DNA from: Euprymna scolopes
Lineage: Eukaryota
Length of the DNA stretch: 64,000 nt
Assembly: GCA_053919585.1 (NCBI GenBank)
Contig: CM132803.1
Direction: 5' to 3' (one strand)
Shown here: positions 3,907-62,562 of the stretch, in pieces
How the letters are laid out: every line of letters starts with the position of its first letter
Numbering within the stretch: position 1 is the first letter of the stretch
Notes under the pieces: model-generated
What the model saw: the letters and a program-made list of their open reading frames with translations, nothing else
What the model was told of the DNA's origin: nothing
Database searches by the model: none
Position numbers and translations under genes: made by a program

Positions 3907-4255
3907 GCATCATGAGAGTCAAAATAGTATTTTTCTACTTTTAATATTTTCAAGAAGGATATGAATAACTGTGTGTTAATCTTTAAACCATTTATAATAG
4001 TAGTCATATATAAATAAAAAATTGATTTAGATATACTAAAACATATTCTCTGTATGAAACAAAACAATCATCAAATACTGTAACAGCCATTGCATACGCA
4101 ACATATTAATTAGGACTACTGCTTCATTTCTCTCACCAACATCCATTTGTAATAAATAGCTTCCAAACAATAAAAAAACACAAAAAACAGTTGCAATACA
4201 ATATACCAGATATAGTTTGCATCTTCATAAATCTGCAGTGAATTGTACAATAAAG
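3907..4255 (+). promoter_or_regulatory. Degenerate promoter module and non-coding exon 1 of pseudogene psiA
   Basis: GCATCATGAGA (3907-3917; others GCATTTTGGGA), TGTAACAGCCATT-N20-AGGA at 4079, donor AAG|GTAAG at 4255/4256. Confidence 0.65.
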
Positions 4256-13253: not shown

Positions 13254-14169
13254 AAAAATTTTTTTATCACTATTTGGACAAAATGCATTATTACTACTAC
13301 ATATAATTTCATAAAAAAAGAAATAGAGTCCCATAACAACAAAACATTTCACACATATAATTGAATCATATAAATTAAAATGTTGAATAATGAAATTATA
13401 CTTTAGTATTTTATAACAATAACAATTAAAATTATTAGACAATAACTTGTACACTTTTATAAAATATTGAGTACACTTATTGCTTTATTGATTCTGGTCT
13501 ATACTAAAATGGATGACTATTTGAGAATGTCAGGTGCTGTATGTGCTTTCCACTTATGTCAGCACTGTTTCCAGTCATCCTGGATTTCTCCTTGCCACTG
13601 GAGTTAAGCAGTGCTGATTCAGGAGAGTATGGTTAGAGATTACACAACCCTTGCTTCACAATTACATGTGCAGGCACCTTTACAGACGGTATCCATCACC
13701 TCTCAAGACTGAACCCTTATTATTATGATGATCATCATCATTATTATAGTATCTATTTCAAAATATACATTCAAATAAAAGATTTTAATTCAATTTTCAA
13801 CAATTTCTAAAAATTTACATTTTTAGACTGAAAATTATTTGTAAATTTGAAATCCATTTTCATTGAAAAACAAATCTAATAAAACACTGTCAATGAAATT
13901 CTCCAATGAATTTAAACTAAGACAATTGCACTGTAATATATATAAGCTGATAATTATTTAAAACAAGAACAAAACATACTCACATATTTACAAGTTTATT
14001 TTATCCACAGATTTTCAAGCTGTAATTGGTATAAATTGTTGTACATTTTTTTATATGCATCTTGACACAAAGACCTATTCCTACACAGTCGTTGAGATAA
14101 AGGCTTTTCAAATATAGATAGAGAGAAAGTAGCAAATGATTTAGTATGAATAACCAAACATACTGAAAT

Positions 14170-14534
14170 GCATTTTGGGAAATCAATTAATTTTTTTTTT
14201 CTTTTTCATGGTTATTCTAAAAACATCCTTATATATATTAAGATATCACAAAAATGTTGATTTCATAAAAAAAAAAAAAAAAAAAATCATATATCTTGTA
14301 ACCTCAGTCCAGGTTTTGCATAAAGCATAGCAGTCATCACATAGTGTAGCAGCCATTACACACTCAACATATTCACTAGGATTGCTGGTCCCTTTTTTTT
14401 CATCAATTAAAGAAAGCAAGCCACCAACCGACTCTTAAATAATAAAAACAAAATAGAAAACAGCAGCTGCAGAAATTACAATAAGGATGTAGTTTTCAGT
14501 TGGGTTGAAACTACAGGATATTTAAAAGAAGAAG
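14170..14534 (+). promoter_or_regulatory. P2 promoter module and non-coding exon 1
   Basis: GCATTTTGGGA 14170-14180; TGTAGCAGCCATT 14345-14357 then N20-AGGA; donor AAG|GTGAGT 14534/14535. Confidence 0.78.
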
Positions 14535-16331: not shown

Positions 16332-18818
16332 ATGATAAAATTGAATTCATCAGATTCTTTCCAGAAGCAATCATACATAAAAATGATAGTATTAACATTT
16401 ATTTTGATATTTCTACACATTTGTCATGGTGTGGATTTATCATTTAAAGTTGAAGAAGGCAAAAGTCCTGGCACTTACCTCGGAGACATTGCTGCCGATT
16501 CTAATGTGATGGATGATGTGGCCATACAAGATCAAAATCTCATTGCATTCAGTCTTATGGAACAGGATGGAACAAGCAGCTCTCCATTATTCCGAATTTC
16601 TAAAAATACAGGAAAACTTTATACAGCACAAACATTGGATGCAGAATCATTGTGTACTTCCAACAAAGAATGTTTTGTGATGGTTGATGTTGCTGTACAA
16701 AAATCAAAAAGAATCATGAAGATTTTAGAAATTAAAGTAATAATTCAGGATGTAAATGACCATCAGCCTGAATTTCCTGATAAACAAGTAAACATTGAAT
16801 ATTCAGAGGATGTAGTTCCAGGAACAAAGGTATCAATTCCAAACGCCATTGATAAAGACGTAAGTCAGAAGAATTCTCTTATTACATATTCTTTAAAAAA
16901 ACTGAAGGAAGAACCATTTCAATTGTCAATATCTAAAAAGGTTGATGGAACATCAGACCTTAGTATAACATTAGAAAAAAGACTTGACCGAGAAGTTAAA
17001 GGTTCTTTTATGATTCGAATAATTGCAAAAGATGGAGGATCTCCTCCAAAAGAAAGTATTCTCTTGGTACATATTACTGTAACTGATGTCAATGATAATC
17101 CTCCTGTTTTTTCTCAAAGCGTCTACAATGTAACAATAAAAAACAAACCAAGTGAAACTTCTTCTATTGCGACTTTATCTGCCACAGATTTAGATTCTGG
17201 TAAAAATGGAAGAGTCACTTATCATTTCAGTACAAAAACATCTGATGTTGCTAAAAGTCATTTTAAATTAAATCAACAAACTGGACAAATTTTCTTAGAA
17301 AAGAAATTTACTTTGAGTAATGTATTAACACATAATTTGTATGTTGAAGCTAAAGATGGGGGCATACCACCATTAAATTCACTTGCAATGGTTTTGGTTA
17401 ATGTAATCAATCAACAAAACAATCCACCAACAATTCATCTAAAATTCCTGTCAGCATCAGGAAAAGATTCAACATCAGTTTCTGAAGACATTGAGGTGGG
17501 AAGTTCCATTGCATATGTAAAAGTGACTGATCATGATGTTGGACAAAATGGAGAAGTGAGTTGCAATCTGCATTATGATAAATTTAAACTACAAAGTCTC
17601 GACACTAAGAAATACCAAGTAATTGTGAAAAAAGCATTGGATAGAGAAAGAGAGGCAAAGCATGAAATTATCATCAGCTGTCAAGATAAAGGATCTCCTC
17701 CACTGCAAAGTAAGAGTAAGTTCTCCATCAAAGTCACCGATGTGAATGATGTAAGGCCACAGTTCTCTATGGAGACATTTAAGTTCTTGATTGAAGAGAA
17801 TGAGAAGTCGAGATTTTCTGTTGGCTTCATCAATGCAACAGACCCAGACCTGGGAGTTGGAGGGAAACTCACCTATTCTCTGCTCACAAATAACAAACAG
17901 TTTTTACCTTTCAAAATCAAAGATGATGGCATGATTTCAGCCATTATGTCACTGGATCATGAGTTTCAAAACATTTACAAGTTTCAAGTATTTGTGAAAG
18001 ATAATGGAATCCCATCTCTCAATAATACAGTCAACGTCATTGTTGAAGTGACTGATAAAAATGATAATGCTCCGTATTTTACATTTCCCAGTGTCAATCC
18101 TTATAACATGGATGTTGTATATTACCGGCATCATTCAAAGAACATCACTTGTGTAAAGGCAGCTGATGGAGATAGTCAAGAGAATGCATTTCTAAAATAT
18201 GAAATAATCAGAGGCAATGACAAGCAGATGTTCACCATCAACCAGTACACTGGTTTGTTAACTTTCAATCGGGTGCTTGCGCAACAAGATGCTGGTTCCT
18301 ATGAGCTAGTGTTTGTTGTCAAGGATAGTGGTAGTCCAGTTCTATCAGCAACAACTAGTATGTTTTTCACTGTGACTGTAAGCAACAAGACATCAGAAAT
18401 GCTAAGTGCCGTTCATACAATCACTGAAGATAAAGTTGATCTTACATCAGTCATTATTATTACGGTTGTAGCAGTGACCGTAGCAGTCATCATTACTGCT
18501 TCAATCTCGGTATGTATCATTCGCTGTAATGATCAGAGAAATGTCACATATGCCCATGCAATGGCACCAACCAATGTGGGTGTTGTTGGTCCAAGTGGCA
18601 GATATATGAGTGATCAGAGACATTTGATGTGTCCTTCAAAGCAGGGAATATCTTGGCCAACTGCTGTCAATGTAAACCAAAGTCAAACTGATAAAATAAG
18701 AAATGCACACATAAACCAAACCAGCAGAGAAGCCAATCCTCTAGAAAAGCTTCCCAGTCAACAACAAAGATCAGCCTCTTTACCACAAACTCAAACCAGG
18801 ATACATAACGAACAACAG
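16332..18818 (+). CDS. Protocadherin P2 large exon (signal peptide, EC1-EC6, TM); start may be ATG 16383
   Basis: Acceptor ttcAG at 16329; 6 cadherin repeats, EC1 Cys-X5-Cys; donor CAG|GTATTT at 18818. Confidence 0.95.
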
Positions 18819-19843
18819 GTATTTACAAACTAATTTTTATGTTATTTTTTAAATCTTTTTAGTGGTGCACTTTGTATATTTTTATTTATTACACATAATA
18901 TTAACTTCAAAGAATTCAATATTCCTTTTTATGTTTTTTACTATATACTTTTCAAATGCTGAAAATGATTACTAATTTTATTCAACTTTTTACAACCTGC
19001 TTTTTAACATTAGTCTACCTTCACTCTAAAATTGCACTGCATTAGCAACTATATTGTATTCTATATATTGTAATAATATGTGGTATATATGTTTATAGAT
19101 TTACACAAATTAATTCAAATTATAAATTCATCAAAACATATTTTTCATAGCCAATATAGTGATCTTTTAAAGAATAAAAACACCAACAATTATTAATAAA
19201 ATTTTATTTTATTGTCAGACATTTTTATAATTAGTTAAAAAGAAAAATTGAATAAAGAAATTTAAACAAAAGGCACAACAATTTTATATTATGATATTGT
19301 TAATTTTCAATTTATTGTGTTGTTCAGAAAGTTGATTGATTGTAGCAGTTGGGTCTTTAAACTATACATATAACTGTTATAATTTTGGTATGACTGATAT
19401 ATTGTCATAACTTGCAATGCAGTTACCTTTGGTAGATACATCTTTTATTTTGTCAAACATATTGCCAAATGTGGACAACCAAAAACTGCAGTTTTTTTTA
19501 AAAATCACAAATGAAGTTTAAAATTAAATAAAGTAACTGACAAATTTATCAGACTATACTAAGATATGATTAATATAAAGAAAAGGGGTTAAAGGGTATT
19601 ATATATTTGTTTTATTCACTTCATATTAGGCCGAATTTAAAAAAAAAAAAGTCTATATATGAAAATATGAATCATCTGCCTGGATCATATGTTAAATATA
19701 TTATTCAGCATGTAACAGACAGATGAGAAGTTTTGTTTTATTGTTAAATATTTGTTGCTTCTACGTTTCTGTGCAAATGATGGCCTGTTTACATAAATAT
19801 GTAAGAGATAATTTCTACAATATATAAATAGGAATGTATAGAT

Positions 19844-25359: not shown

Positions 25360-25712
25360 GAACAAAGAACTGTGTGAAAAAAAGAGCATCTTGGGAGTTT
25401 GAAATTAATTTTTTAAAAACAAAATTTTATTCAAATCTTCATATATATTTTATACTGGATACATGAAAATTTCGAATTATTTCATTAAAAACAAAATAAA
25501 AACAAATAAAACCGAATGCAATTATATTCCTGCTGAACAGTAGTCACCACTTATTGTAGCAGCCATTGCACACAAAACACACACAACAGGATAATTGTCT
25601 TTTGTGTTCATATGGAGGACTCAACCCTGTATGGAATTTCCAAAGAGCAGCTGTGAAAATTATAATGAAAATTTAATTTTTATTTCTGAAGACAAATTTT
25701 CATAAAATAAAG
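25360..25712 (+). promoter_or_regulatory. P3 promoter module and non-coding exon 1
   Basis: GAACAAAG 25360, GCATCTTGGGA 25386, TGTAGCAGCCATT 25555-25567, donor AAG|GTAAGT 25712/25713. Confidence 0.78.
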
Positions 25713-26607: not shown

Positions 26608-29079
26608 ATGATGACACAGGAATTCCTATTGATAATCAAAAGTATGTTGCTACAAATGTGTCTCTTAATTTATTGTGTAGACTTTTCTTACTGTGTTGAC
26701 CTGACTTTCAAAGTAGAAGAAGGTAAAAGTCCTGGCACTTACCTTGGAGACATTGCTGCCGATTCTAATGTGATGGATGATGTGGCCATACAAGATCAAA
26801 ATCTCATTGCATTCAGTCTTATGGAACAGGATGGAACAAGCAGTTCTCCATTATTCCGGATTTCTAAAAATACAGGAAAACTCTATACAGCACAAACATT
26901 GGATGCTGAATCTCTGTGTACTTATGGAAAAGAATGTTTCTTAATGGTTGATGTTGCGGTTCAAAAATCTAAAAGAATTATGAAGATTTTAGAAATCAAA
27001 GTAATAATTGAAGATGTAAATGATCATCAACCAGAATTTCCGGATAAACAAGTTAATATTGAGTTTGATGAAGATGATGGCAAAGGAGTGAAACGTATGA
27101 TCTCAAATGCAATAGATAAAGATATTGGACGCATTAATTCTCAGATTACATACGAGTTAAAAAAATATAAAAATGAACCATTTGATTTATCAGTCTCTAA
27201 AAATGTGGACGGAACAGCTGATCTTTACATTATTCTGAAAGAAAGATTAGATAGAGAAGTGAAAGAAAGCTACATGGTAAAAGTTATTGCTAAAGATGGC
27301 GGATCTCCTTCTAAACAAAGTATTTTAGATGTTCACATTTCAGTTACAGATATGAATGATAATCCTCCTGTCTTTTCACAAAATCTTTATAATGTCACAA
27401 TCAAAAATGAACCAAGTGAAACTTCTTCAATTGCAACTTTATCTGCCACAGATTTAGATTCTGGTAAAAATGGAAGAGTCACTTATCATTTCAGTACAAA
27501 AACATCGGATGTTGCTAAAAGTCATTTTAAATTAAATCAACAAACTGGACAGATTTTCTTAGAAAAGAAATTTACATTGAATAATATATTAATACATAAT
27601 TTGTATGTTGAAGCACAAGATCAAGGAAATCCTCCATTAACAGCAAAGTCAATGGTATTAGTCAATGTGAACAACCAACAGAATAACCCTCCAATGATTC
27701 ATCTCAAGTTCCTGTCAGCATCTGGAAAAGATTCAACATCAGTTTCTGAAAACATTGAGGTGGGAAGTTCTATTGCATATGTAAAAGTGACTGATCATGA
27801 TGTTGGACAAAATGGAGAAGTGAGTTGCAATCTGCATTATGATAAATTTAAACTACAAAGTCTCGACACTAAGAAATACCAAGTAATTGTGAAAAAAGCA
27901 TTGGATAGAGAAAGAGAGGCAAAGCATGAAATTATCATCAGCTGTCAAGATAAAGGATCTCCTCCACTGCAAAGTAAGAGTAAGTTCTCCATCAAAGTCA
28001 CCGATGTGAATGATGTAAGGCCACAGTTCTCTATGGAGACATTTAAGTTCTTGATTGAAGAGAATGAGAAGTCGAGATTTTCTGTTGGCTTCATCAATGC
28101 AACAGACCCAGACCTGGGAGTTGGAGGGAAACTCACCTATTCTCTGCTCACAAATAACAAACAGTTTTTACCTTTCAAAATCAAAGATGATGGCATGATT
28201 TCAGCCATTATGTCACTGGATCATGAGTTTCAAAACATTTACAAGTTTCAAGTATTTGTGAAAGATAATGGAATCCCATCTCTCAATAATACAGTCAACG
28301 TCATTGTTGAAGTGACTGATAAAAATGATAATGCTCCGTATTTTACATTTCCCAGTGTCAATCCTTATAACATGGATGTTGTATATTACCAGCATCATTC
28401 AAAGAACATCACTTGTGTAAAGGCAGCTGATGGAGATAGTCAAGAGAATGCATTTCTAAAATATGAAATAATCAGAGGCAATGACAAGCAGATGTTCACC
28501 ATCAACCAGTACACTGGTTTGTTAACTTTCAATCGGGTGCTTGCGCAACAAGATGCTGGTTCCTATGAGCTAGTATTTGTTGTCAAGGATAGTGGTAGCC
28601 CAGTTCTATCAGCAACAACTAGTATGTTTTTCACTGTCACTGTAAGCAACAAGACATCAGAAATGCTAAGTGCCGTTCATACAATCACTGAAGATAAAGT
28701 TGATCTTACATCAGTCATTATTATTACAGTTGTAGCAGTGACCGTAGCAGTCATCATTACTGCTTCAATCTCGGTATGTATCATTCGCTGTAATGATCAG
28801 AGAAATGTCACATATGCCCATGCAATGGCACCAGCCAATGTGGGTGTTGTTGGTCCAAGTGGCAGATATATGAGTGATCAGAGACATTTGATGTGTCCTT
28901 CAAAGCAGGGAATATCTTGGCCAACTGCTGTCAATGTAAACAAAAGCCAAGCAGATAAAATAAGAAGTGCACATATTAACCAAACCAACAGAGAATCTAA
29001 TCCTCTTGAAAAGCTTCCCAGTCAGCAACAAAGATCAGCTTCCTTACCTCATACTGAAACAAATTACAATGAACAACAG
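26608..29079 (+). CDS. Protocadherin P3 large exon
   Basis: Acceptor at 26593; 6 EC plus TM; donor CAG|GTAAGT at 29079. Confidence 0.95.
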
Positions 29080-30586
29080 GTAAGTCTTAACCTCTGTTTA
29101 CATTATTTTTTATGATAATTCTTTATAAAGAATGTCAAAGTTTTAGTTTCATGTTTACAAGAAACTTATGAATGAAATGTTTCTTATTTTAAATTTCGAT
29201 ATCAAGTGAAACAATAATGAGCTGGCAAATCCATTTAATATTACACAAAAAATATGCCCATATTATGCTCGTGGTAATGTTGGAAAAGAATATATCAGCT
29301 TTGGAATGTGTGTTGTGTGGTTTCTGCCTTAGCTGTACACACACACACACAGATAACTACTCTTTTATATAATCGACTAATACGGTTATCTGGGAACATA
29401 AACAACAAAATAGAAAAGTTAAAAAGCATGTGCAACATCCTTCTATTAAATCCTCTGTTTTTCTGCTCTTCTCCTTTCAATATCCTCCTTTTCTCTCTCA
29501 CCCCGTATCACGTTTTCTCTGACAAATTGATGAATTATTACATAATATTAAAATTTGTCCTAACCGTACATGACCTCCACTGGCTTATTCTAATAACCCT
29601 CAGAAGAATGAATATTAAAAGAAATGTGCCTATACTTTACCCAAGGCAATAATGAAAAACAAAAATACAATATACTTTTAAAATTGTTTTTAATTTTCTT
29701 TTTATTTATCAGATAGTTACATAATACAAAACAGTGGGAGTTTTCCCTTTTTTCTTAGCATATTTTATAGTTTAGATTTTTTTTTCACCCTAAATTAAAA
29801 TATAACAATTTTTTTATAGGTCTAGAGTGTGGATTTGTAGATTCAAGTAATTAACAACTAGCTTACTTGAAAAATGTTTGCTACTTCAAATATTTGAAAT
29901 AAAAATTTTTCATAATTAAATTTTGCCATAGCTTTTTTCACATTTATTCATATAGACATAAACATTTTGTTGAATTTTTATATAAATTCATTTTTTTAAT
30001 ATGGCTGTAAAGAAAGAAATAATAAACAATATTCGTAAACAGAAATATTTATTAAATCAAAATTAAAGCAATCATTGAATAAAAATATAATAAAGAATAG
30101 TTAATGAATAAAATGCTCAGCATGAAACCGTTACTTACTTAATGAATGTGTTTCACATAAACAAATACGTTTTTATAAACTTAAAAATATTTCTATTTCA
30201 TCAATGATAACAGATTTTAGTAACAAAGGTAATATTTTCACATAAAATATGATCTTACTGCATTTGTTGATCATCTTTGGACAGATTTGTCTGTATTTGT
30301 CTTAAACATAAATACATATATAATCACCATTTAAAAATTGTCTTTTTATCATTCATTAATATTTTATAGATTTGATTTCAAAGATTCGAATTTTTATCAT
30401 TTTAATTCATCAGCTGTATAAATGTAAAAAAACAAAAATATGCTTAGAATAAAACCTTTCGATTAATATTATGAATGTTTTTTTTTTAAATTTTTTAAAT
30501 CAGCTTCACTTAACTTAATAATCATACATTTGTTTGATGTATGTTCGTAAACATTTTTATAAACTTAAAAATTCTCTACTCAGCAG

Positions 30587-33216: not shown

Positions 33217-33650
33217 CATTATCTGCCTACAAAGACTTGATAGTTTTTCTTCCATTAAAATTCAAAATTAAATATTTATTTTCAATTTTTTAACAAAACT
33301 CTTGTCACAGTTTAAATTATTGATATAGTTAATTAGGCATGATTTAATATTTTGATGATGGAAAACATATTGGATATAATCAGCTTTGAACAAAAGTTTT
33401 TGTTCTATATAGAAACAAAGGAAAATTAATGACATTAAATAGAAAAAGTAATTCATCTTAAAAATAATAAGCTAGAAGTTATTCTTAAAAAAAAACTAAT
33501 TATACTAAAAATTATTTCAAGTATTAATTGTGAATAAAAAAAGAAAAACCACCATGTAGGTTTTACTTACACTGAACTTTTTTTCATCACAATAAAGGAT
33601 GCAACCTTCTGGTCCTGTTCATGGAGTGAAAGAAGAAAGCAGTCTGTAAA

Positions 33651-34008
33651 GAACAAAGGGCTAAATTCAGACATTGCATTTTGGGAGTTAAACATTTTTG
33701 TTTTGTTTTAAGATTATTTTTATGTTTTATATATACATATTTATATATTTCAAAATACAATGATATTTATTCATATTCCTTTAAAAAAATAAAACAAAAT
33801 CAATCTAATTTTTTCATGATGAATAATAGCCATTATGGAATGTAGCAGCCATTAGAAACACAACACACTCATTAGGACTGCTGTATTACATCTTACAACA
33901 GAAACATTTTTATGAATATGATTTTGGCAAATGTACACTTGCAGAATTGTTAATAAGGATGTAATTTTCCATCTTTCTTCATAATCCTCAAATTTTTCTG
34001 AAAAGAAG
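33651..34008 (+). promoter_or_regulatory. P4 promoter module and non-coding exon 1
   Basis: GAACAAAGG 33651, GCATTTTGGGAG 33676, TGTAGCAGCCATT 33841-33853, donor AAG|GTAAGA 34008/34009. Confidence 0.8.
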
Positions 34009-35875: not shown

Positions 35876-38329
35876 ATGTTTATCACAGAGATGTCATTAT
35901 CCATTTATGTATTATTCCTTATTCTGGCCATATCTAAAGGTGCAGATCTGACATTTAAAGTAGAAGAAGGCAAAAGTCCTGGCACTTACCTTGGAGACAT
36001 TGCTGCCGATTCTAATGTGATGGATGATGTGGCCATACAAGATCAAAATCTCATTGCATTCAGTCTTATGGAACAGGATGGAACAAGCAGCTCTCCATTA
36101 TTCCGGATTTCTAAAAATACAGGAAAACTTTATACAGCACAAACATTGGATGCCGAGTCACTATGTACTTCCAACAAAGAATGTTTTGTGATGGTTGATG
36201 TTGCTGTACAGAAATCTAAAAGAATAATGAAGATATTAGAAGTAAAAGTTAATGTACAAGATGTGAATGATCATCAACCAGAATTTCCTGACAAACAAGT
36301 TAACATTGAATTTTCTGAAAGGGATGCAAAAGGGACAAAATTATCGATTCCAAACGCCATTGATAAAGATGTAAGTCAGAAGAATTCCCTTATTACATAT
36401 TCTTTAAAAAAACTGAAGGAAGAACCATTTCAATTGTCAATATCTAAAAAGGTTGATGGAACATCAGACCTTAGTATAACATTAGAAAAAAGACTTGACC
36501 GAGAAGTGAAAGATTCTTTTATGATTCGAATAATTGCAAAAGATGGAGGATCTCCTCCAAAAGAAAGTATTCTCTTGGTACATATTACTGTTACTGATGT
36601 CAATGATAATCCTCCTGTTTTTTCTCAAAGCGTCTACAATGTAACAATAAAAAACAAACCAAGTGAAACTTCTTCTATTGCAACTTTATCTGCCACAGAT
36701 TTAGATTCTGGTAAAAATGGAAGAGTCACTTATCATTTCAGTACAAAAACGTCTGATGTTGCTAAAAGTCATTTTAAATTAAATCAACAAACTGGACAGA
36801 TTTTCTTAGAAAAGAAATTTACACTAAGTAATGTATTAACACATAATTTGTATGTTGAAGCTAAAGATGGAGGAATCCCACCATTAAATTCACTTGCAAT
36901 GGTTTTGGTTAATGTAATTAATCAACAAAATAACCCACCAACAATTCATCTAAAATTCCTGTCAGCATCCGGAAAAGATTCAACATCAGTTTCTGAAAAC
37001 ATTGAGGTGGGAAGTTCCATTGCATATGTAAAAGTGACTGATCATGATGTTGGACAAAATGGAGAAGTGAGTTGCAATCTGCATTATGATAAATTTAAAC
37101 TACAAAGTCTCGACACTAAGAAATACCAAGTAATTGTGAAAAAAGCATTGGATAGAGAAAGAGAGGCAAAGCATGAAATTATCATCAGCTGTCAAGATAA
37201 AGGATCTCCTCCACTGCAAAGTAAGAGTAAGTTCTCCATCAAAGTCACCGATGTGAATGATGTAAGGCCACAGTTCTCTATGGAGACATTTAAGTTCTTG
37301 ATTGAAGAGAATGAGAAGTCGAGATTTTCTGTTGGCTTCATCAATGCAACAGACCCAGACTTGGGAGTTGGAGGGAAACTCACCTATTCTCTGCTCACAA
37401 ATAACAAACAGTTTTTACCTTTCAAAATCAAAGATGATGGCATGATTTCAGCCATTATGTCACTAGATCATGAGTTTCAAAACATTTACAAGTTTCAAGT
37501 ATTTGTGAAAGATAATGGAATCCCATCTCTCAATAATACAGTCAACGTCATTGTTGAAGTGACTGATAAAAATGATAATGCTCCGTATTTTACATTTCCC
37601 AGTGTCAATCCTTATAACATGGATGTTGTATATTACCGGCATCATTCAAAGAACATCACTTGTGTAAAGGCAGCTGATGGAGATAGTCAAGAGAATGCAT
37701 TTCTAAAATATGAAATAATCAGAGGCAATGACAAGCAGATGTTCGCCATCAACCAGTACACTGGTTTGTTAACTTTCAATCGGGTGCTTGCGCAACAAGA
37801 TGCTGGTTCCTATGAGCTAGTGTTTGTTGTCAAGGATAGTGGTAGTCCAGTTCTATCAGCAACAACTAGTATGTTTTTCACTGTGACTGTAAGCAACAAG
37901 ACGTCAGAAATGCTAAGTGCCGTTCATACAATCACTGAAGATAAAGTTGATCTTACATCAGTCATTATTATTACGGTTGTAGCAGTGACCGTAGCTGTTA
38001 TCATTACTGCTTCAATCTCGGTATGTATCATTCGCTGTAATGACCAGAGAAATGTCACATATGCTCATGCAATGGCACCAGCCAATGTGGGTGTTGTTGG
38101 TCCAAGTGGCAGATATATGAGTGATCAAAGACATTTGATGTGTCCTTCAAAGCAGGGAATATCTTGGCCAACTGCTGTCAATGTAAACCAAAATCAATCA
38201 GATAAAGTAAGAAATGCACACATAAACCAAACTAACAGAGAATCTCATCCTACAGAAAAGCTTCCCAGTCAACAACAGAGATCAACCTCCCTTCCTCATA
38301 ACCAGACTTCAGCAAGTATTGAATCACGG
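35876..38329 (+). CDS. Protocadherin P4 large exon
   Basis: Acceptor at 35830; 6 EC plus TM; donor CGG|GTAAGT at 38329. Confidence 0.95.
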
Positions 38330-38821
38330 GTAAGTACTTTTTTTAAACAAATATTTTATTCATGCAATAGTTTTTTTAAAAACAAAATGTTTTAAATGGA
38401 AAGGCTCCTGGCTGAAGTAATGATGCAAAACAATTACTCTGCATCACCACTAGTGAGCTAACCCAGTTTACAAGTCTCATACTTTAACCAAAATGAAATC
38501 CTGCTAATCTACACAAGAAAAAACTCCAGAAGTTTCTACTGCTACTATAGTAATAATAAATCTGTATAATAAAAGATTTATTTATTTTTTTTTTATGTTT
38601 ATATTTAGTTTGAATTAAAGTCATTATTATCCTTATTTTATTACATTCATCAAGAATCACGAGGAAAGATATTATTGAAAATTCTTAATATTATTCAACT
38701 AATATTCATTTATTCAGTTTTTCAGTTTTAGATAAAATTCTTCAAGAACTTTTTAATGTTTTTATCTTGCATGTAATTTTTTTGGTAAATAATCATTTGA
38801 TGTTTATTTTTCTTATTATAG

Positions 38822-41574: not shown

Positions 41575-41610
41575 AGTTTTAAATGTCTGATATGTATTAA
41601 TACTAACTTG

Positions 41611-42191: not shown

Positions 42192-42555
42192 GAACAAAGG
42201 AGTGAATAATCCGAATTGCATTTTGGGAGTTACATATGATTTTTTTTTAAATATAGTTTTTATTTAAGAAATGATTTTTATCTCTCATTTAAAAGTATTA
42301 TATTAACTTTTGAATCAATTTTCTAAAAAAAAATATAAAATAATGAGATATAGATTTAATTTCTCTATGATGAGTAGTAGACATTATCAATTGTAGCAGC
42401 CATTAAGCACTCACCACATTCAATAGGACTTCTATCATCTTTCTTAGCTTAATCAAAAAAACTGGACACTTTTACTTTGAATAATATTCTCAGAAAACAG
42501 CTGCAGAAACCAAAATGAAAATGTAACTGAAAATGATACAATTTTACTAACAAAG
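42192..42555 (+). promoter_or_regulatory. P5 promoter module and non-coding exon 1
   Basis: GAACAAAGG 42192, GCATTTTGGGAG 42218, TGTAGCAGCCATT 42392-42404, donor AAG|GTAAGT 42555/42556. Confidence 0.8.
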
Positions 42556-44217: not shown

Positions 44218-46653
44218 ATGATACACATAGGAATTCTATTCTCTATTTTGCATATTGTATTTACTGCGGATCTGACAGTGAAAGTTGAAGAAGGGAAAAG
44301 TCCTGGCACTTACCTTGGAGACATTGCTGCCGATTCTAATGTGATGGATGATGTGGCCATACAAGATCAAAATCTCATTGCATTCAGTCTTATGGAACAG
44401 GATGGAACAAGCAGCTCTCCATTATTCCGGATTTCTAAAAATACAGGAAAACTTTATACAGCACAAACATTGGATGCAGAGTCATTGTGCACATTCTACA
44501 AAGAATGTTTTCTAATGGTTGATGTTGCTGTTCAAAAATCTAAAAGGATTATGAAAATACTTGAAGTAAAAGTAATAATACAAGACATTAATGATCATCA
44601 ACCAGAATTTCCTGATAAACAAGTGAACATAAAATTTTCTGAGGGAGATATCACAGGAACAAAAATATCAATTCCTAATGCTGTTGACAAAGATATTGGA
44701 ATTATCAATTCTCAGATTACTTATGAACTAAAGAAATATAAAGATGAACCATTTGATTTGTCCGTTTCCAAAAATATTGATCAAACTGCTGATCTCTATA
44801 TTATTCTGAAAGAAAGATTGGACAGAGAAGTGAAAGAAAGCTACATGGTAAAAGTCATTGCTAAAGATGGTGGATCTCCTTCTAAACAAAGTATTTTAGA
44901 TGTTCACATTTCAGTTGCAGATGTGAATGATAATCCTCCTGTTTTCTCACAAAATCTTTATAATGTCACAATCAAAAATGAACCAAGTGAAACTTCTTCT
45001 ATTGCAACTTTATCTGCCACAGATTTAGATTCTGGAAAAAATGGAAGAGTCACTTATCATTTCAGTACAAAAACATCTGATGTTGCGAAAAGTCATTTTA
45101 AATTAAATCAACAAACTGGACAGATTTTCTTAGAAAAGAAATTTACATTGAGTAACATGCTGACTTATAACTTATTTGTGGAGGCTACTGATGGTGGCAA
45201 TCCTCCCTTAACAGCTAAATCAATGATCATTGTAAATGTTGTTAATAATCAAAATAATCCACCAACAATTCACTTAAAATTTTTGGCAGCATCTGGAAAA
45301 GATTCAACATCTGTTTCTGAAAATATTGAGGTGGGAAGTTCCATTGCATATGTAAAAGTGACTGATCATGATGTTGGACAAAATGGAGAAGTGAGTTGCA
45401 ATCTGCATTATGATAAATTTAAACTACAAAGTCTCGACACTAAAAAATACCAAGTAATTGTGAAAAAAGCATTGGATAGAGAAAGAGAGGCAAAGCATGA
45501 AATTATCATCAGCTGTCAAGATAAAGGATCTCCTCCACTGCAAAGTAAGAGTAAGTTCTCCATCAAAGTCACCGATGTGAATGATGTAAGGCCACAGTTC
45601 TCTATGGAGACATTTAAGTTCTTGATTGAAGAGAATGAGAAGTCGAGATTTTCTGTTGGCTTCATCAATGCAACAGACCCAGACCTGGGAGTTGGAGGGA
45701 AACTCACCTATTCTCTGCTCACAAATAACAAACAGTTTTTACCTTTCAAAATCAAAGATGATGGCATGATTTCAGCTATTATGTCACTGGATCATGAGTT
45801 TCAAAACATTTACAAGTTTCAAGTATTTGTGAAAGATAATGGAATCCCATCTCTCAATAATACAGTCAACGTCATTGTTGAAGTGACTGATAAAAATGAT
45901 AATGCTCCGTATTTTACATTTCCCAGTGTCAATCCTTATAACATGGATGTTGTATATTACCGGCATCATTCAAAGAACATCACTTGTGTAAAGGCAGCTG
46001 ATGGAGATAGTCAAGAGAATGCATTTCTAAAATATGAAATAATCAGAGGCAATGACAAGCAGATGTTCACCATCAACCAGTACACTGGTTTGTTAACTTT
46101 CAATCGGGCACTTGCGCAACAAGACGCTGGTTCCTATGAGCTAGTGTTTGTTGTCAAGGATAGTGGTAGTCCAGTTCTATCAGCAACAACTAGTATGTTT
46201 TTCACTGTGACTGTAAGCAACAAGACATCAGAAATGCTAAGTGCCGTTCATACAATCACTGAAGATAAAGTTGATCTTACATCAGTTATTATTATTACGG
46301 TTGTAGCAGTGACTGTAGCAGTCATCATTACTGCTTCAATCTCGGTGTGTATCATTCGCTGTAATGATCAGAGAAATGTCACATATGCCCATGCAATGGC
46401 ACCAGCTAATGTAGGTGTTGTTGGTCCAAGTGGCAGATATATGAGTGATCAGAGACATTTGATGTGTCCTTCAAAGCAGGGAATATCTTGGCCAACTGCT
46501 GTCAATGTAAACAAAGGCCAAACAGACAAAACAAGAAATGCACACATAAACCAAACCAGCAGAGAATCCCATCCTCTAGAAAAGCTTCCCAGTCAGCAAC
46601 AGAGATCAGCTTCTTTACCTCAGAATCAAACACAGCTTCAAGATTCTCACCAG
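44218..46653 (+). CDS. Protocadherin P5 large exon
   Basis: Acceptor at 44185; 6 EC plus TM; donor CAG|GTAGTA at 46653. Confidence 0.95.
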
Positions 46654-47825
46654 GTAGTACCTTCTATTTGTACAATTATATTTCATATTAACAATTGTAA
46701 ATTTATCTATTCATATAAATAAATGCTAGAATTTTAATAATATTTATAGTACTTTTATCGTACATATTCTAATTAAATATTTTATTATAAAATTAAATCT
46801 GTATTCTTAAGTTTATAAATTTTTGTTCTTCCTTTTTCATTAATACATTTTTAAATTTCTTCAGTTCATTTTTGTACTATCTGTATTTAACTTTTACTTG
46901 ATGCATTATAATTTAAAAAAAATTGATCTCGTTTTTGTATTTATTTATAAATTGAAAGTATTTTAGAATCAGTACAATATTAAAATCCTCAGTGTCTTCA
47001 CTTTTAATTGGTTACTGTATTAGAATTTTAATTGTCCTTTAAATCCTTCTCCTACTACTCATATATGTATTGTTTCCTCTTGCTTAACCAGAATTTACAT
47101 AATAAAATTGTACTTACTGTCTTTATGTTGGAAAAATTAATCAGAATTAAGAATCAGGTTATTTTAGGTATCAGAATTTTTTTTAGCCTAATTTCAAATT
47201 CCAAAAATGCTTCTTTCAATCTTTTTTTTGTTTAAAACTTACTTTTCTATTGCTTATACTAATGATAAAATGATAAATATTTATGGTTTTTAAACTACTA
47301 GTAAAACTAAAATCTCTATACCTAAATAAAAAATATATAAATCTATATAAAAAGGAATTTATGTAAAAATGGTATTGAAGAAATGGTTCCCACAAAAATG
47401 ATATATAAAATATTTATGTCAGTAAAGGTTCTTTTCAAATCTGAAAAATTATAGAACTGGAAATTATCTTCAGTTTTTTTGTAGTACTAAACACAACAGA
47501 TGGCCTAAATATTTGTGCGACAAAACACTAGTCTGTCACAAAGCTGCAATTCTCAATGCCTTCGTAGCATGTTTAGCAAAATAATGTTTGAGCTACACAT
47601 GACATTATTTAGAAGGTTAGCATCTATAACGGATATTAAACTAGGTCATATACGGTAAAACAGCTGAAACATTGTGATTATAACTATGATAAGAACACTT
47701 CTAGTATGAATACATATAATGTAAAATAGAATTTCTCATCTACAAAATTCACAAGAAGACATTTGAAAGTTTTAATATTCATATAATTACAAAAGTGAAT
47801 TTAAAGTTATATCATTTCTTTTTAG

Positions 47826-49909: not shown

Positions 49910-50282
49910 GAACAAAGGATTGAATTGACACAATGCATTTTGGGAATTAAAAATGAATTTCATTTATTTTTAAAATTTATAATTAAATACACATTTATTT
50001 CCAAATATTTATGCATTTAGGAGAATTTTATGAAAAAAAAAAAGAATAATTAAAATTAATTATGTTGGCTTTGTTTTCTTTATGATGAATAGTAGTTGTC
50101 GTTTATAGTAGCAGCCATTGTACATACATCACATTCACTAGGATTCCTACTTACTGTCTCAACTAAACATAAAGGATGGATCCCTGACTGAATGATTTTC
50201 TTTTAAACAATTGCTGCATAAGATATAGTAACAGCATCAATTCCATTGTATTTTAATTAGACAATCATTCTTTGCTACAAAG
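49910..50282 (+). promoter_or_regulatory. P6 promoter module and non-coding exon 1
   Basis: GAACAAAGG 49910, GCATTTTGGGA 49935, GTAGCAGCCATT 50108-50119, donor AAG|GTAAGT 50282/50283. Confidence 0.8.
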
Positions 50283-51096: not shown

Positions 51097-53535
51097 ATGT
51101 TGATTCAAATATGGATTCTGCTCTCATTCCTACACATTTGTAATAGTGTAGATTTGACATTCAAAGTTGAAGAAGGTAAAAGTCCTGGCACTTACCTTGG
51201 AGACATTGCTGCCGATTCTAATGTGATGGATGATGTGGCCATACAAGATCAAAATCTCATTTCATTCAGTCTTATGGAACAAGATGGAACAAGCAGCTCT
51301 CCATTATTCCGGATTTCTAAAAATACAGGAAAACTTTATACAGCACAAACATTGGATGCTGAATCTCTGTGTACTTATGGAAAAGAATGTTTCTTAATGG
51401 TTGATGTTGCAGTTCAGAAATCTAAAAGGATTATGAAAATTTTAGAAATCAAAATAATAATTGAGGATGTAAATGATCATCAACCAGAATTTCCTGATAA
51501 ACAAGTGACCGTTCTGTTTGAAGAAAATTATAAAAAAGGAACACAAGTTTTAATTCCAAATGCTATTGACAAAGATATTGGAGATATCAATTCACAAATA
51601 ACTTATGATCTTAAAAAATATAAAGATGAACCATTCGGGTTATCTGTTTCAAAAAATGTTGATGGCACATCAGACTTATATATGATACAAAAGGAGAGCT
51701 TAGACAGAGAAGTGAAAGAAAGCTACATGGTAAAAGTCATTGCTAAAGATGGTGGATCTCCTTCTAAACAAAGTATTTTAGATGTTCACATTTCAGTTGC
51801 AGATGTGAATGATAATCCTCCTGTCTTCTCACAAAATCTTTATAATGTCACAATCAAAAATGAACCAAGTGAAACTTCTTCTATTGCAACTTTATCTGCC
51901 ACAGATTTAGATTCTGGTAAAAATGGAAGAGTCACTTATCATTTCAGTACAAAAACATCTGATGTTGCTAAAAGTCATTTTAAATTAAATCAACAAACTG
52001 GACAGATTTTCTTAGAAAAGAAATTTACATTGAGTAACATGCTGACTTATAACTTATTTGTGGAGGCTACTGATGGTGGCAATCCTCCCTTAACAGCTAA
52101 ATCAATGATCATTGTAAATGTTGTTAATAATCAAAATAATCCACCAACAATTCATCTAAAATTTTTGGCAGCATCTGGAAAAGATTCAACATCTGTTTCT
52201 GAAAACATTGAGGTGGGAAGTTCCATTGCATATGTAAAAGTGACTGATCATGATGTTGGACAAAATGGAGAAGTGAGTTGCAATCTGCATTATGATAAAT
52301 TTAAACTACAAAGTCTCGACACTAAGAAATACCAAGTAATTGTGAAAAAAGCATTGGATAGAGAAAGAGAGGCAAAGCATGAAATTATTATCAGCTGTCA
52401 AGATAAAGGATCTCCTCCACTGCAAAGTAAGAGTAAGTTCTCCATCAAAGTCACCGATGTGAATGATGTAAGGCCACAGTTCTCTATGGAGACATTTAAG
52501 TTCTTGATTGAAGAGAATGAGAAGTCAAGATTTTCTGTTGGCTTCATCAATGCAACAGACCCAGACCTGGGAGTTGGAGGGAAACTCACCTATTCTCTGC
52601 TCACAAATAACAAACAGTTTTTACCTTTCAAAATCAAAGATGATGGCATGATTTCAGCCATTATGTCACTGGATCATGAGTTTCAAAACATTTACAAGTT
52701 TCAAGTATTTGTGAAAGATAATGGAATCCCATCTCTCAATAATACAGTCAACGTCATTGTTGAAGTGACTGATAAAAATGATAATGCTCCGTATTTTACA
52801 TTTCCCAGTGTCAATCCTTATAACATGGATGTTGTATATTACCGGCATCATTCAAAGAACATCACTTGTGTAAAGGCAGCTGATGGAGATAGTCAAGAGA
52901 ATGCATTTCTAAAATATGAAATAATCAGAGGCAATGACAAGCAGATGTTCGCCATCAACCAGTACACTGGTTTGTTAACTTTCAATCGCGTGCTTGCGCA
53001 ACAAGATGCTGGTTCCTATGAGCTAGTGTTTGTTGTCAAGGATAGTGGTAGCCCAGTTCTATCAGCAACAACTAGTATGTTTTTCACTGTCACTGTAAGC
53101 AACAAGACATCAGAAATGCTAAGTGCCGTTCATACAATCACTGAAGATAAAGTTGATCTTACATCAGTCATTATTATTACGGTTGTAGCAGTGACTGTAG
53201 CAGTCATCATTACTGCTTCAATCTCGGTATGTATCATTCGCTGTAATGACCAGAGAAATGTCACATATGCTCATGCAATGGCACCAGCCAATGTGGGTGT
53301 TGTTGGTCCAAGTGGCAGATATATGAGTGATCAGAGACATTTGATGTGTCCTTCAAAGCAAGGAATATCTTGGCCAACTGCTGTCAATGTAAACCAAAGT
53401 CAAACAGATAAAATAAGAAATGCACATATCAACCAAACCAGCAGAGAATCCAATCCCACAGAAAAGCTTCCCAGTCAGCAACAAAGATCAGCTTCTCTGC
53501 CACAGGCTAAAACCCAATTACAAGCTGAATCTAAA
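51097..53535 (+). CDS. Protocadherin P6 large exon
   Basis: Acceptor at 51046; 6 EC plus TM; donor AAA|GTAAGT at 53535. Confidence 0.95.
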
Positions 53536-53870
53536 GTAAGTAATATATTTTTCCTATATATACATCTTTTATGTGTGATATCTTGATTGATAGAATAGTT
53601 TAAAAACTTATTTTATTATTTTGTTGTATAAATTCAAATATTTTAGAACTCTCTTTTTATAGAGATATACATTTTACTTGGGTAATGTTTTATTGAAGTA
53701 TTACAGATATAATTTTATTTTAATGTTTGTATTTCTTTATTATATTATCAATAGACTTCTTTATTAAATTATCCTTCCTGAATTTTTCCTCAATAAGTAT
53801 TTAATTTTGGTTATTTCATAGTTGCAATCCATAACAAATTTTCAATATAATTTTTTTTTCTATTCAACAG

Positions 53871-56552: not shown

Positions 56553-56932
56553 GGACAAAGAACTGAACTAACAGAATGCATTTTGGGAATAAAAAAATTA
56601 TTTTAATATTTTTAATTTTAAATATTACCATAGGTTTTATTTTTTAGTTTGCAAATATTCGAAAGAGTCTTTTTAAAAAAATTAGATAATTCTAATCTAA
56701 TCCAATGAAATTTCATACCTCATTGATGAATAGTAGTCATCTCCCACTGTAGCAGCCATTGTTCACACAACACACTCATTAGGATTACTTCTTTCGACAT
56801 CACATCAACATGAGGAGGAACATGAGAATCTTTACCTGGATGTAATTCATAAGAAATAAATTTCTGCAAATGTATCAGAGAATAAAATGTGGATTTAATT
56901 CATTTGAAATACAGAAATACCAATAAAAAAAG
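56553..56932 (+). promoter_or_regulatory. P7 promoter module and non-coding exon 1
   Basis: GGACAAAG 56553, GCATTTTGGGA 56578, TGTAGCAGCCATT 56748-56760, donor AAG|GTAAGA 56932/56933. Confidence 0.8.
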
Positions 56933-61647: not shown

Positions 61648-62562
61648 GTAAAAGTTTTATATTTATTATTTATTTGTTTTTTTTTAAACAAAATTTTATT
61701 ATTATAAAAATAAATGATATTTTGGTAGTTCCATAATTCAGTAAAAATTTAAATTATTATATTCATATTTTATTGTTGTAAATAAATTTCTTCAAAGAAA
61801 TTAATTGCTATATAGAAATTTTGCTTTTTCATTTAGCTTAATAAAAACATACTAATCAGCAATTTACATTATAATACCATTCAATTTTGCAGCTAATTTT
61901 GACCTGTATACATTATGTGCATATAATTGTGTAGCAATTATATGCACATAATGTAATAAGATTTTTTAATAATTAGTAATAAGATTTTTTGTATTTTTTT
62001 TGTATTTAACATAACATATTACTGTTAATACATTAATTCTGAAAGCTATTCATGTATGGTGTTTAAAATTTTGAGTAAACTAAATCATATTCAGAGTACT
62101 GCAGTTTTTCTTTTTTTGGTTAATACATCTAAAAATTAATTTATATTGTTTTCTTATATCTTAGCAAAGATGAAACAATTCAAAGTAAAACCCTCTTCTG
62201 ATATATCTAAACTTACCTGCATAATATTAGCAATTTATAATTTTGTACACTTCAAATGTCAGATTATTTTAAACTGATCTTCATTACTTTATATCCATAT
62301 TTGTCCTTCTTGCATCATGTTGACAATGCACGGAATTTGTAGCAAAATCAAGGGAAGGTGGAATAAGAGTAAAAACTACTTGCCAAAATTCAACCCACAA
62401 CTATCTCTCAACCATTGTTAAGATAAATACTCTAGCAAAATTTCTTCACCCATTTTTTAGATAAAAGGATACAAATATGTTTTCTGAGAACTAGTGAGAT
62501 GCTTCAAGGATTTTCTTAATTAAAGCTCTATTAAAGCACACAATGAAACCACATACCGTACA

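What the first reader, a model, noticed from the sequence alone, without database searches (positions are those of the whole stretch)
33817..33880. Proximal promoter element TGTAGCAGCCATT-N20-AGGA repeated with exact spacing ahead of seven units
Seen at 4079, 14345, 25555, 33841, 42392, 50108 and 56748, in otherwise unalignable AT-rich DNA. Consensus is TGATGAATAGTAGTCAT-N~7-TGTAGCAGCCATT-(CA-rich, usually ending TCAYT)-AGGAYT. The gap from AGCCATT to AGGA is exactly 20 nt in all seven copies, and an AAG|GTRAG donor follows 157-189 bp after the motif start. Established: GCCAT is the YY1/Pho core and TCAYT resembles the Initiator. Inference: this is the core promoter/TSS and a functional analogue of the vertebrate Pcdh conserved sequence element, but without a CTCF site.
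Basis: partly seen in the sequence, partly recalled or inferred. Interest (0 to 1): 0.85.

Follow-up and report, generated by a model that had tools for sequence, protein, structure and literature searches.

The report
Shared promoter block of cephalopod protocadherins
Every protocadherin (neuronal adhesion) gene in this squid/cuttlefish-type tandem array is preceded by the same rigidly spaced ~70-bp DNA block, which most likely is its core promoter and gives a concrete handle on the still-unknown way cephalopods switch these genes on.

Summary
The 13-mer TGTAGCAGCCATT (at most 1 mismatch) occurs seven times, all on the + strand. AGCCATT-N20-AGGA occurs exactly seven times and nowhere else in the 64 kb. 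An AAG|GTRAG donor follows 158-190 bp after each copy.

The 13-mer is the centre of an ungapped ~71-bp block. Pairwise identity is 0.96 in the 13-mer and 0.61-0.66 in the flanking boxes, against 0.31 background.

Each block heads one unit: a short non-coding exon 1, a 0.9-2.2 kb intron, a ~2.5 kb protocadherin coding exon and the gene's own tail exon. The least conserved copy belongs to the one decayed gene.

A ZNF143/Staf-like box lies 168-178 bp upstream in five units. No CTCF consensus is present.

RNA evidence is indirect. One RNA contig begins exactly at the TCATT. Thirteen RNA runs hold only the fraction of 33751-34008 expected if RNA begins near 33855-33870.

Best reading (0.7): a TATA-less core/proximal promoter, with the 13-mer at about -30 to -18. 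The YY1 assignment rests on a 5-7 bp core and is unproven. The likeness to the vertebrate CSE is positional only.

Scan notes s1-288450 and s1-295566 report a fixed-spacing element before seven protocadherin genes 371 kb upstream in this genome. I did not verify them.

The parts
4054..4124 (+). Conserved promoter block of unit 1, the decayed gene. The 13-mer at 4079-4091 has 1 mismatch.
   Evidence: Most diverged copy: 20 differences from consensus against 10-16 in the others.
14320..14390 (+). Conserved promoter block of unit 2. 13-mer at 14345-14357, AGGA at 14378.
25530..25600 (+). Conserved promoter block of unit 3. 13-mer at 25555-25567.
33816..33886 (+). Conserved promoter block of unit 4, the reported site. 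13-mer at 33841-33853, TCATT at 33869-33873, AGGA at 33874-33877.
   Evidence: The RNA contig of run X1 starts at 33870.
42367..42437 (+). Conserved promoter block of unit 5. 13-mer at 42392-42404.
50082..50152 (+). Conserved promoter block of unit 6. 13-mer at 50107-50119 with 1 mismatch.
56723..56793 (+). Conserved promoter block of unit 7. 13-mer at 56748-56760.
4109..4255 (+). Putative non-coding exon 1 of unit 1. Start inferred; donor GT at 4256.
14375..14534 (+). Putative non-coding exon 1 of unit 2. Donor GT at 14535; predicted acceptor ends at 16329.
25585..25712 (+). Putative non-coding exon 1 of unit 3. Donor GT at 25713; predicted acceptor ends at 26593.
33871..34008 (+). Putative non-coding exon 1 of unit 4. 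Donor GT at 34009; predicted acceptor ends at 35830.
   Evidence: RNA runs hold this part. The splice itself was not observed.
42422..42555 (+). Putative non-coding exon 1 of unit 5. Donor GT at 42556; predicted acceptor ends at 44185.
50137..50282 (+). Putative non-coding exon 1 of unit 6. Donor GT at 50283.
56778..56932 (+). Putative non-coding exon 1 of unit 7. Donor GT at 56933; predicted acceptor ends at 59144.
14167..14181 (+). Distal ZNF143/Staf-like box, 178 bp before the 13-mer.
33673..33687 (+). Distal ZNF143/Staf-like box, 168 bp before the 13-mer.
42215..42229 (+). Distal ZNF143/Staf-like box, 177 bp before the 13-mer.
49932..49946 (+). Distal ZNF143/Staf-like box, 175 bp before the 13-mer.
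56575..56589 (+). Distal ZNF143/Staf-like box, 173 bp before the 13-mer.
16332..18833 (+). Large protocadherin coding exon of unit 2 (ORF, 833 aa).
26608..29115 (+). Large protocadherin coding exon of unit 3 (ORF, 835 aa).
35876..38395 (+). Large protocadherin coding exon of unit 4 (ORF, 839 aa). An RNA-supported donor lies at 38328.
44218..46722 (+). Large protocadherin coding exon of unit 5 (ORF, 834 aa).
51097..53586 (+). Large protocadherin coding exon of unit 6 (ORF, 829 aa).
59191..61707 (+). Large protocadherin coding exon of unit 7 (ORF, 838 aa).

Best explanation
The ~71-bp block is the TATA-less core/proximal promoter of each protocadherin gene in a head-to-tail array. It comprises the upstream box ATGATGAATAGTAGTCATCA, 7 nt, the invariant 13-mer TGTAGCAGCCATT, a 20-nt CA-rich spacer that usually ends in TCAYT, and AGGAYT.

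Inferred mechanism: a sequence-specific factor binds the 13-mer and probably the related upstream half-site TAGYAGYCAT, 19 bp upstream of its counterpart in the 13-mer. If transcription starts at the invariant A of TCAYT, the 13-mer occupies -30 to -18, the place a TATA box would hold. The exact 20-nt gap to AGGA then reflects the fixed geometry between that factor, the pre-initiation complex and the start site.

A ZNF143/Staf-like site ~200 bp upstream of the start serves as the activator element. Transcription yields a 125-160 nt non-coding exon 1, spliced at AAG|GTRAG to the large coding exon.

Shown: the block, its spacing, its specificity, its link to each gene and the absence of a CTCF consensus. 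Indirectly supported: the 5' edge of the RNA. Inferred: the binding factor, the exact +1 and the splice in these particular genes.
For: - Seven copies, one per gene unit, all in gene orientation with exact internal spacing, and none elsewhere.
- Identity is 0.96 in the 13-mer against a 0.31 background in the surrounding non-coding DNA. This points to purifying selection rather than recent duplication.
- An invariant AAGGT.AG donor lies 158-190 bp downstream. Polypyrimidine-CAG acceptors lie 2-46 nt before the ATGs.
- The ZNF143-like box AATGCATTYTGGGAR lies 168-178 bp upstream in 5 units: 6 matches against 1.05 expected.
- The copy before the decayed gene is the most degenerate.
- In run X1 an RNA contig starts at 33870 (the C of TCATT), and 33724-33869 is not covered.
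- Thirteen RNA runs from several studies hold 0.33-0.47 of the sampled words of 33751-34008. The ceiling of 0.47 equals the share expected if only 33870-34008 is RNA (0.478). X1, whose coverage is known, holds 0.43.
- Paralogue transcripts carry spliced 5' non-coding exons joined upstream of the ATG.
- No RNA structure and no Rfam family were found.
Against: - No read or contig in the four runs laid shows the exon 1 to exon 2 splice. The X1 contig runs unspliced through the donor (33870-34097) and another crosses the predicted acceptor.
- X1 also covers introns and 33400-33723 at similar depth. Its contig start could therefore be a coverage accident.
- Which words the other 12 runs hold is inferred from X1 alone. 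Three runs hold one word more than X1, so the RNA edge may lie up to ~15 nt upstream of 33870. Run X8 holds 0.90.
- In a distant paralogue (59% protein identity) the homologous but degenerate element lies inside two RNA contigs, with 21-60 nt more upstream. That element scores 26 bits against a next best of -0.1.
- TCAYT is present in only 4 of 7 copies.
Confidence: 0.7

Rival explanations
1. The block is transcribed. The start site lies upstream, and the element acts in the 5' UTR, for example through a short upstream reading frame of about nine codons (ATG ATG AAT AGT AGT CAT ..) that ends at the TAG inside TGTAGC, or as an RNA-binding-protein site.
For: - In all seven copies the frame from the ATGATGA box ends at the TAG of the 13-mer (TAA in the 4079 copy). 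Several differences are third-position transitions (AAT/AAC, AGT/AGC, CAT/CAC), read from the sequences.
- Contigs L002 and L003 of a paralogue contain the homologous element.
- Run X8 holds 0.90 of 33751-34008.
Against: - Two of the six intact genes lack an ATG in that frame (ATA AAG at 14320, CTG CTG at 25530).
- The most conserved part (GCAGCCATT) lies after the stop, so a reading frame does not explain it.
- Thirteen RNA runs hold no more than the exon-1 share. X1 lacks 33724-33869.
- The consensus fold is only -1.7 kcal/mol with no real covariation.
Confidence: 0.13
2. It is a promoter, but the 13-mer itself is the initiator. A YY1-type factor bound to GCCATT would direct initiation at the A of CCA(+1)TT, as described for YY1-dependent initiators. 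TCAYT/AGGA would then be a downstream element at about +20.
For: - GCCATT is a described YY1 (and NF-Y/YY1) core, and YY1 is an initiator-binding protein (PMC3332055, PMC7481187).
- Three RNA runs hold one sampled word more than X1, so some RNA reaches upstream of 33870.
Against: - A start at 33851 should add about 2-3 sampled words. The ceiling is one extra word.
- The X1 contig begins at 33870.
- The YY1 flank NTT is not conserved (the sequence after CCAT is T-R-N), and the first consensus C is an A.
Confidence: 0.1
3. The block has no function of its own. It would be a remnant kept by recent tandem duplication or by the gene conversion that homogenises part of the coding exons, or a 3'-end/termination element of the upstream gene.
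For: - The genes are tandem duplicates with a homogenised coding segment (earlier scan notes). The coding exons are 87-93% identical in protein.
- The upstream gene's tail exon ends only 620-1160 bp before each block.
Against: - Identity falls to background within 30-50 bp on both sides. It is highest in a 13-bp island shared by all copies, not by particular pairs.
- Distance to the upstream tail exon varies from 619 to 1159 bp, while distance to the downstream donor is held at 158-190 bp.
- A diverged but significant copy sits in the 5' exon of a 59%-identical paralogue.
Confidence: 0.05

Closest known systems
Conserved sequence element (CSE) of vertebrate clustered protocadherin promoters, a CTCF site (Wu et al. 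2001, as reviewed in PMC7811963)
   Same: A short conserved element repeated in the same orientation in the promoter of nearly every member of a tandem protocadherin array. Each member has one large exon for the ectodomain and transmembrane helix.
   Different: - The sequence is different: no CGCT box and no CpG at all in the 13-mer.
- No CTCF consensus is present anywhere in the window.
- The element is tied to a separate non-coding exon 1. It lies 1-2.4 kb, at variable distance, from the ATG.
- Each gene has its own tail exon instead of shared constant exons.
- Looping and promoter choice are untested.
YY1/Pho binding sites and YY1-dependent initiators (consensus CGCCATNTT / GCCATCTTG, PMC7481187; GCCATT NF-Y/YY1 motif, PMC3332055)
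   Same: An invariant GCCATT core close to the likely start site of a TATA-less promoter.
   Different: - Only 6 of 8 specified consensus positions match.
- The equally invariant 5' half TGTAGCA is not part of the YY1 motif.
- GCCAT alone occurs 83 times in the window on both strands, so the core has little discriminating power.
- Binding is untested.
ZNF143/Staf-dependent promoters, including the distal-plus-proximal element layout of snRNA genes (own knowledge for the snRNA geometry; SBS elements at promoters, bioRxiv 10.1101/2023.09.27.559875)
   Same: A Staf-like box ~200 bp upstream of the putative start, plus rigidly spaced proximal boxes at about -55 and -30. This is the geometry of a distal element with a start-site-fixing proximal element.
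   Different: - The genes are spliced protein-coding genes, not snRNA genes.
- The species' own snRNA proximal element is unknown, so it could not be compared.
- ZNF143 also serves many ordinary mRNA promoters.
Chelicerate sDscam tandem arrays expressed by alternative promoters (Cao et al. 2018, as cited in PMC6339937)
   Same: An invertebrate tandem array of recognition-molecule units, each with its own promoter.
   Different: It is a different gene family. There, units splice to shared downstream exons. No shared promoter motif of this kind is known to me.

Membership tests
Vertebrate Pcdh CSE / CTCF-binding promoter element | ~22-bp element with an invariant CGCT box | tested here: not met
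   The block consensus has no CGCT. The 13-mer has no CpG.
Vertebrate Pcdh CSE / CTCF-binding promoter element | Matches the CTCF consensus and binds CTCF | tested here: not met
   CCASYAGRKGGCR with at most 1 mismatch gives 0 matches on either strand of the window. Binding itself is not testable here.
Vertebrate Pcdh CSE / CTCF-binding promoter element | [quoted passage not shown] | tested here: not met
   Distance to the ATG is 990-2443 bp. The constant distance is to the exon-1 donor, 158-190 bp.
Vertebrate Pcdh CSE / CTCF-binding promoter element | Variable exons spliced to shared constant exons | tested here: not met
   Each unit has its own ~270-bp tail exon, 84-90% identical between units.
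YY1/Pho binding site | GCCAT core | tested here: met
   GCCATT is invariant in 7 of 7 copies.
YY1/Pho binding site | Extended consensus CGCCATNTT (PMC7481187) | tested here: inconclusive
   The sequence AGCCATT-R-N matches 6 of 8 specified positions. The TT flank is not conserved.
YY1/Pho binding site | Bound by the YY1 orthologue | not testable with these tools
   Needs EMSA, CUT&Tag or a DNA pull-down.
Initiator-containing focused core promoter | Inr-like sequence (YYANWYY / TCAKTY) at the start site | tested here: inconclusive
   TCAYT is present in 4 of 7 copies and CA in 6 of 7. The A is invariant, and positions +4/+5 are A and G.
Initiator-containing focused core promoter | Transcripts begin at that position | tested here: inconclusive
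   The X1 contig starts at 33870. Thirteen RNA runs hold at most the exon-1 share of words. No cap-selected data were available, and a paralogue's contigs extend further upstream.
ZNF143/Staf-dependent promoter | Staf binding-site consensus upstream of the start | tested here: met
   AATGCATTYTGGGAR with 0-1 mismatch occurs in 5 units, 168-178 bp before the 13-mer. There are 6 matches against 1.05 expected. The consensus was written from my own knowledge.
snRNA-type (distal + proximal element) promoter | Drives an intron-less, non-polyadenylated small RNA with a 3' box | tested here: not met
   The downstream product is a spliced protocadherin gene. No snRNA or other Rfam family is in the window.

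The most novel reading that the evidence does not exclude
The invariant 13-mer, with its half-site repeat, is the docking site of a dedicated factor that governs which of the many protocadherin promoters fires in a given neuron. That factor would be the YY1 orthologue or one of the hugely expanded cephalopod C2H2 zinc-finger proteins. This would be a CTCF-independent, CpG-free solution to one-of-many promoter choice, evolved convergently with the vertebrate CSE/CTCF system and shared across the cluster. Scan notes report a like element before seven more genes 371 kb away.
Probability: 0.15. Interest if true: 0.85.

Novelty: new variant of a known kind. Interest (0 to 1): 0.55.

Why it matters
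Cephalopods expanded protocadherins independently of vertebrates. How the hundreds of genes are regulated is called enigmatic in the literature I could search (PMC10658181). I found no promoter element described for them.

A defined, rigidly spaced 71-bp block makes the question testable. It gives a PWM for genome-wide scans and a bait for identifying the bound factor. It also gives precise targets for reporter or CRISPR spacing mutants.

It already shows one clear difference from vertebrates: no CTCF-type element, no CpG, and no shared constant exons.

Tried and rejected
No 5' splice joint appeared. One odd CT..GC joint (33877 to 35944) with a 20-nt side was dismissed as a paralogue or chimera.
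- **Exact look-up of the six window ORFs in the protein collection.** None is present, so no transcript contigs of these very genes could be fetched.
- **The look-up of encoding contigs on closer relatives (P0001, P0002, P0014, P0039, P0052, P0120).** No DNA was served because the files are too large. Cross-species conservation of the block could not be tested.
- **Transcript contigs of four 57-61%-identical paralogues.**
  - Only P0069 carries a recognisable, degenerate element.
  - P0091 contig starts are scattered from -323 to +7 around an AGGACT of uncertain homology.
  - P0104 contigs are unspliced.
- **C/D-box snoRNA idea (ATGATGA is a C box).** Rejected: no D box, the box is not conserved in 3 copies, and there is no Rfam hit.
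- **RNA hairpin.** Rejected.
- **Antisense micro-ORF starting at the ATGG of the reverse complement.** It is 12 codons with a poorly conserved middle, so I treated it as coincidence.
- **The search of earlier findings by sequence.** It returned nothing.

Full report
**What is in the window**

The 64-kb window is 72% A+T and has three N runs. It holds a head-to-tail array of protocadherin genes.
- There are six intact ORFs of 829-839 aa plus a partial one at the left edge.
- The ORFs carry Cadherin_2 and five or more Cadherin domains.
- They are 87-93% identical to one another in protein.
- The best named relatives are Acanthosepion pharaonis PCDH proteins at 60-63% identity. Unnamed ENA proteins reach 86%. 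The animal is therefore a squid/cuttlefish-type cephalopod.

**The observation**

The 13-mer TGTAGCAGCCATT occurs seven times with at most one mismatch, all on the + strand, at 4079, 14345, 25555, 33841, 42392, 50107 and 56748. At two mismatches there are 11 matches against 1.26 expected by shuffling.

The composite AGCCATT-N20-AGGA occurs exactly seven times and nowhere else on either strand, although AGCCATT alone occurs 21 times.

Aligned without gaps, the copies share a block from -25 to +45 relative to the 13-mer. Its parts, in order:
- the box ATGATGAATAGTAGTCATCA;
- 7 nt;
- the 13-mer;
- a CA-rich 20-mer that ends in TCAYT in 4 of 7 copies, with the A invariant;
- AGGAYT.CT.

Pairwise identity is 0.96 in the 13-mer and 0.61-0.66 in the adjoining boxes. 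It falls to 0.31-0.43 beyond, against 0.31 for random pairs.

Leave-one-out PWM scores are 55-81 bits. The best non-member in the window scores below -5.

An invariant AAGGT.AG donor follows 158-190 bp after the 13-mer start.

**Anatomy of a unit**

- After the donor comes 0.9-2.2 kb of unalignable DNA.
- Next is a polypyrimidine-CAG acceptor 2-46 nt before the ATG of the large ORF.
- A GT..AG intron from 38328 to 38821 is supported by an RNA contig.
- Each unit has its own ~270-bp conserved tail exon, 84-90% identical between units, at 2649-2920, 12970-13254, 24619-24925, 32909-33222, 41285-41583, 49118-49410 and 55618-55915.
- That tail exon ends 619-1159 bp before the next block. The block therefore keeps a constant distance to the downstream donor, not to the upstream gene.
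- There are no shared constant exons.
- Unit 1 (block at 4079) is followed only by scrambled, frame-shifted protocadherin fragments at 7644-11046. Its block is the most degenerate, with 20 differences from consensus against 10-16. This fits a constraint tied to a working gene, but it is a single case.

**Upstream architecture**

- A second conserved island lies 168-178 bp before the 13-mer in five units. It reads AATGCATTYTGGGAR, usually preceded by ACAAAG.
- There are 6 matches against 1.05 expected.
- From my own knowledge, this is the reverse complement of the Staf/ZNF143 binding-site consensus.
- Published work places SBS elements preferentially at promoters (bioRxiv 10.1101/2023.09.27.559875).
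- Between the two islands lie A-rich tracts.
- No CTCF consensus occurs anywhere in the window.

**Where does transcription start?**

Direct evidence is thin. In the only read-laying run, the polyA raw-read runs had almost no reads on exon 1.

Run X1 (RNA contigs) gave a 228-nt contig spanning exactly 33870-34097.
- It begins at the C of TCATT and runs unspliced through the donor.
- From the depth table, X1 has no coverage over 33724-33869.
- X1 also covers introns and 33400-33723, probably the upstream gene's 3' UTR. On its own, this start is only suggestive.

I used the second run search on 33751-34008, with 30 sampled words.
- Thirteen RNA runs from several studies and two organism labels hold 0.33-0.47 of the words.
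- The ceiling of 0.47 equals the share of 31-mers lying wholly in 33870-34008 (0.478).
- X1, whose coverage is known, scores 0.43.
- Only one run (X8) holds 0.90.
- Three runs hold one word more than X1, so the RNA edge may lie up to about 15 nt upstream of 33870.

In most RNA libraries the upstream box is therefore absent and the 13-mer at most partly present, while exon 1 is present.

Caveats:
- I could not see which words the other runs hold.
- Contigs usually stop short of the true 5' end.
- Unitigs could in principle break at k-mers shared with paralogues. Within this window the blocks share no 31-mer.

**Relatives**

Transcript contigs of a 59%-identical paralogue (P0069; L001-L010) show alternative 5' non-coding exons joined ~129 nt before the ATG. 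This confirms the gene plan for the family.
- Their first exon carries a significant but degenerate copy of the element: 8 of 13 positions in the 13-mer, the same 20-nt CA-rich gap, then AGGACTGC.
- It scores 26 bits against a next best of -0.1 in 171,000 positions.
- In L002 and L003 that copy lies 60 and 21 nt inside the contig. In that gene some RNA therefore starts upstream.

Other distant paralogues (P0091, P0023, P0104) show no clear copy, and their contig starts are scattered. The strict motif thus appears specific to this subfamily.

Two scan notes (s1-288450, s1-295566) report a fixed-spacing bipartite element before seven protocadherin genes 371 kb upstream in the same genome. I could not verify them.

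**Mechanism**

If +1 is the invariant A of TCAYT, the 13-mer spans -30 to -18 and the upstream box spans -55 to -36. The Staf-like box then lies near -200.

A factor-bound element at the TATA position with an exactly fixed gap to the start region is what a start-site-positioning core promoter looks like.

The upstream box contains TAGTAGTCAT. This 10-mer matches TAGCAGCCAT of the 13-mer at 8 of 10 positions, both differences being T/C transitions, and lies 19 bp upstream of it. That suggests two sites for one factor.

The YY1 idea rests on GCCATT.
- The published consensus CGCCATNTT (PMC7481187) is matched at 6 of 8 specified positions.
- GCCATT is also described as a dual NF-Y/YY1 motif (PMC3332055).
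- The invariant TGTAGCA half is unexplained by YY1.
- GCCAT alone occurs 83 times in the window.

A long invariant site would equally fit a multi-finger C2H2 protein, a family greatly expanded in cephalopods (PMC13218726).

**Rivals**

- **Transcribed 5'-UTR element.** A short frame from ATGATGA ends at the TAG of the 13-mer in all seven copies. However, two intact genes lack the ATG, the best-conserved bases lie beyond the stop, and the RNA shares argue against it.
- **YY1-type initiation at CCA(+1)TT.** This should add two to three sampled words, and only one extra word is seen.
- **Passive retention, gene conversion or a 3'-end element of the upstream gene.** The island-like conservation and the distance pattern argue against these.
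- **RNA structure or a known RNA family.** Neither is present.

**Comparison and novelty**

The block resembles the vertebrate CSE only in being a conserved promoter element repeated before each member of a protocadherin array (PMC7811963).

It fails the CSE's defining features:
- no CGCT box;
- no CTCF consensus;
- no fixed distance to the ATG;
- no shared constant exons.

I found no description of a cephalopod protocadherin promoter element in the searchable literature. A 2023 review calls the regulation of these clusters enigmatic (PMC10658181).

That tandem paralogues share a promoter is expected. The rigid spacing, the invariant 13-mer and the CTCF-free, CpG-free design are the new and useful parts. 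I rate it a new variant of a known kind, of moderate interest. Interest would be high only if it proves to be the handle for promoter choice.

Noticed in passing
window 14167-14181, 33673-33687, 42215-42229, 49932-49946, 56575-56589: A ZNF143/Staf-like box (AATGCATTYTGGGAR), usually preceded by ACAAAG, lies 168-178 bp before the 13-mer. Degenerate versions occur in the units at 4079 and 25555. It is also the subject of scan note s1-292388.
   Followed up: partly
window 7644-11046: The unit headed by the 4079 block has only scrambled, frame-shifted protocadherin fragments: residues 3-227, then 231-276, 29-109, 306-331 and 640-799 of the query. It is a decayed and rearranged gene copy.
   Followed up: partly
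window 37705 (same context at 524, 18194, 28458, 46029, 52911, 61023): All seven genomic paralogues have A here with identical +/-20-nt context. PolyA RNA reads show G in 13 of 17 (X23) and 5 of 8 (X24). This could be A-to-I editing at a synonymous CTA>CTG site, or reads from paralogues elsewhere in the genome.
   Followed up: partly
window 38328-38821: An RNA contig (X15) supports a GT..AG intron that starts 67 nt before the ORF's stop. The last ~22 codons of the long ORF are therefore probably intronic, and the protein continues in small 3' exons towards the conserved tail exon (41285-41583 for this unit).
   Followed up: partly
window 33816-33846 and the equivalent positions of the other six blocks: A + strand frame from ATGATGA (M M N S S H ..) ends at the TAG inside TGTAGC in all seven copies (TAA in the 4079 copy). 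The ATG is missing in the copies at 14320 and 25530. It may be a uORF if some transcripts start upstream, but is probably coincidence.
   Followed up: partly
window 39370-40163 vs 19842-20568: An ~0.7-kb repeat at 87-91% identity, partly inverted and with internal inverted repeats, lies in the 3' intergenic or intronic DNA of two units. It looks like a transposon remnant.
   Followed up: no
window 46314-46326 and 53196-53208: TGTAGCAGTCATC (2 mismatches to the 13-mer) lies inside two coding exons at the same relative position (~2.1 kb into the ORF). It is probably a coding coincidence within the homogenised segment.
   Followed up: no
window 33400-33723: RNA run X1 covers this stretch downstream of the unit-3 tail exon. 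It includes the distal Staf-like box of unit 4 and stops at an A/T-rich tract. The upstream gene's 3' UTR may therefore overlap the next gene's distal promoter, leaving only ~100-150 bp between the poly(A) site and the next start.
   Followed up: no
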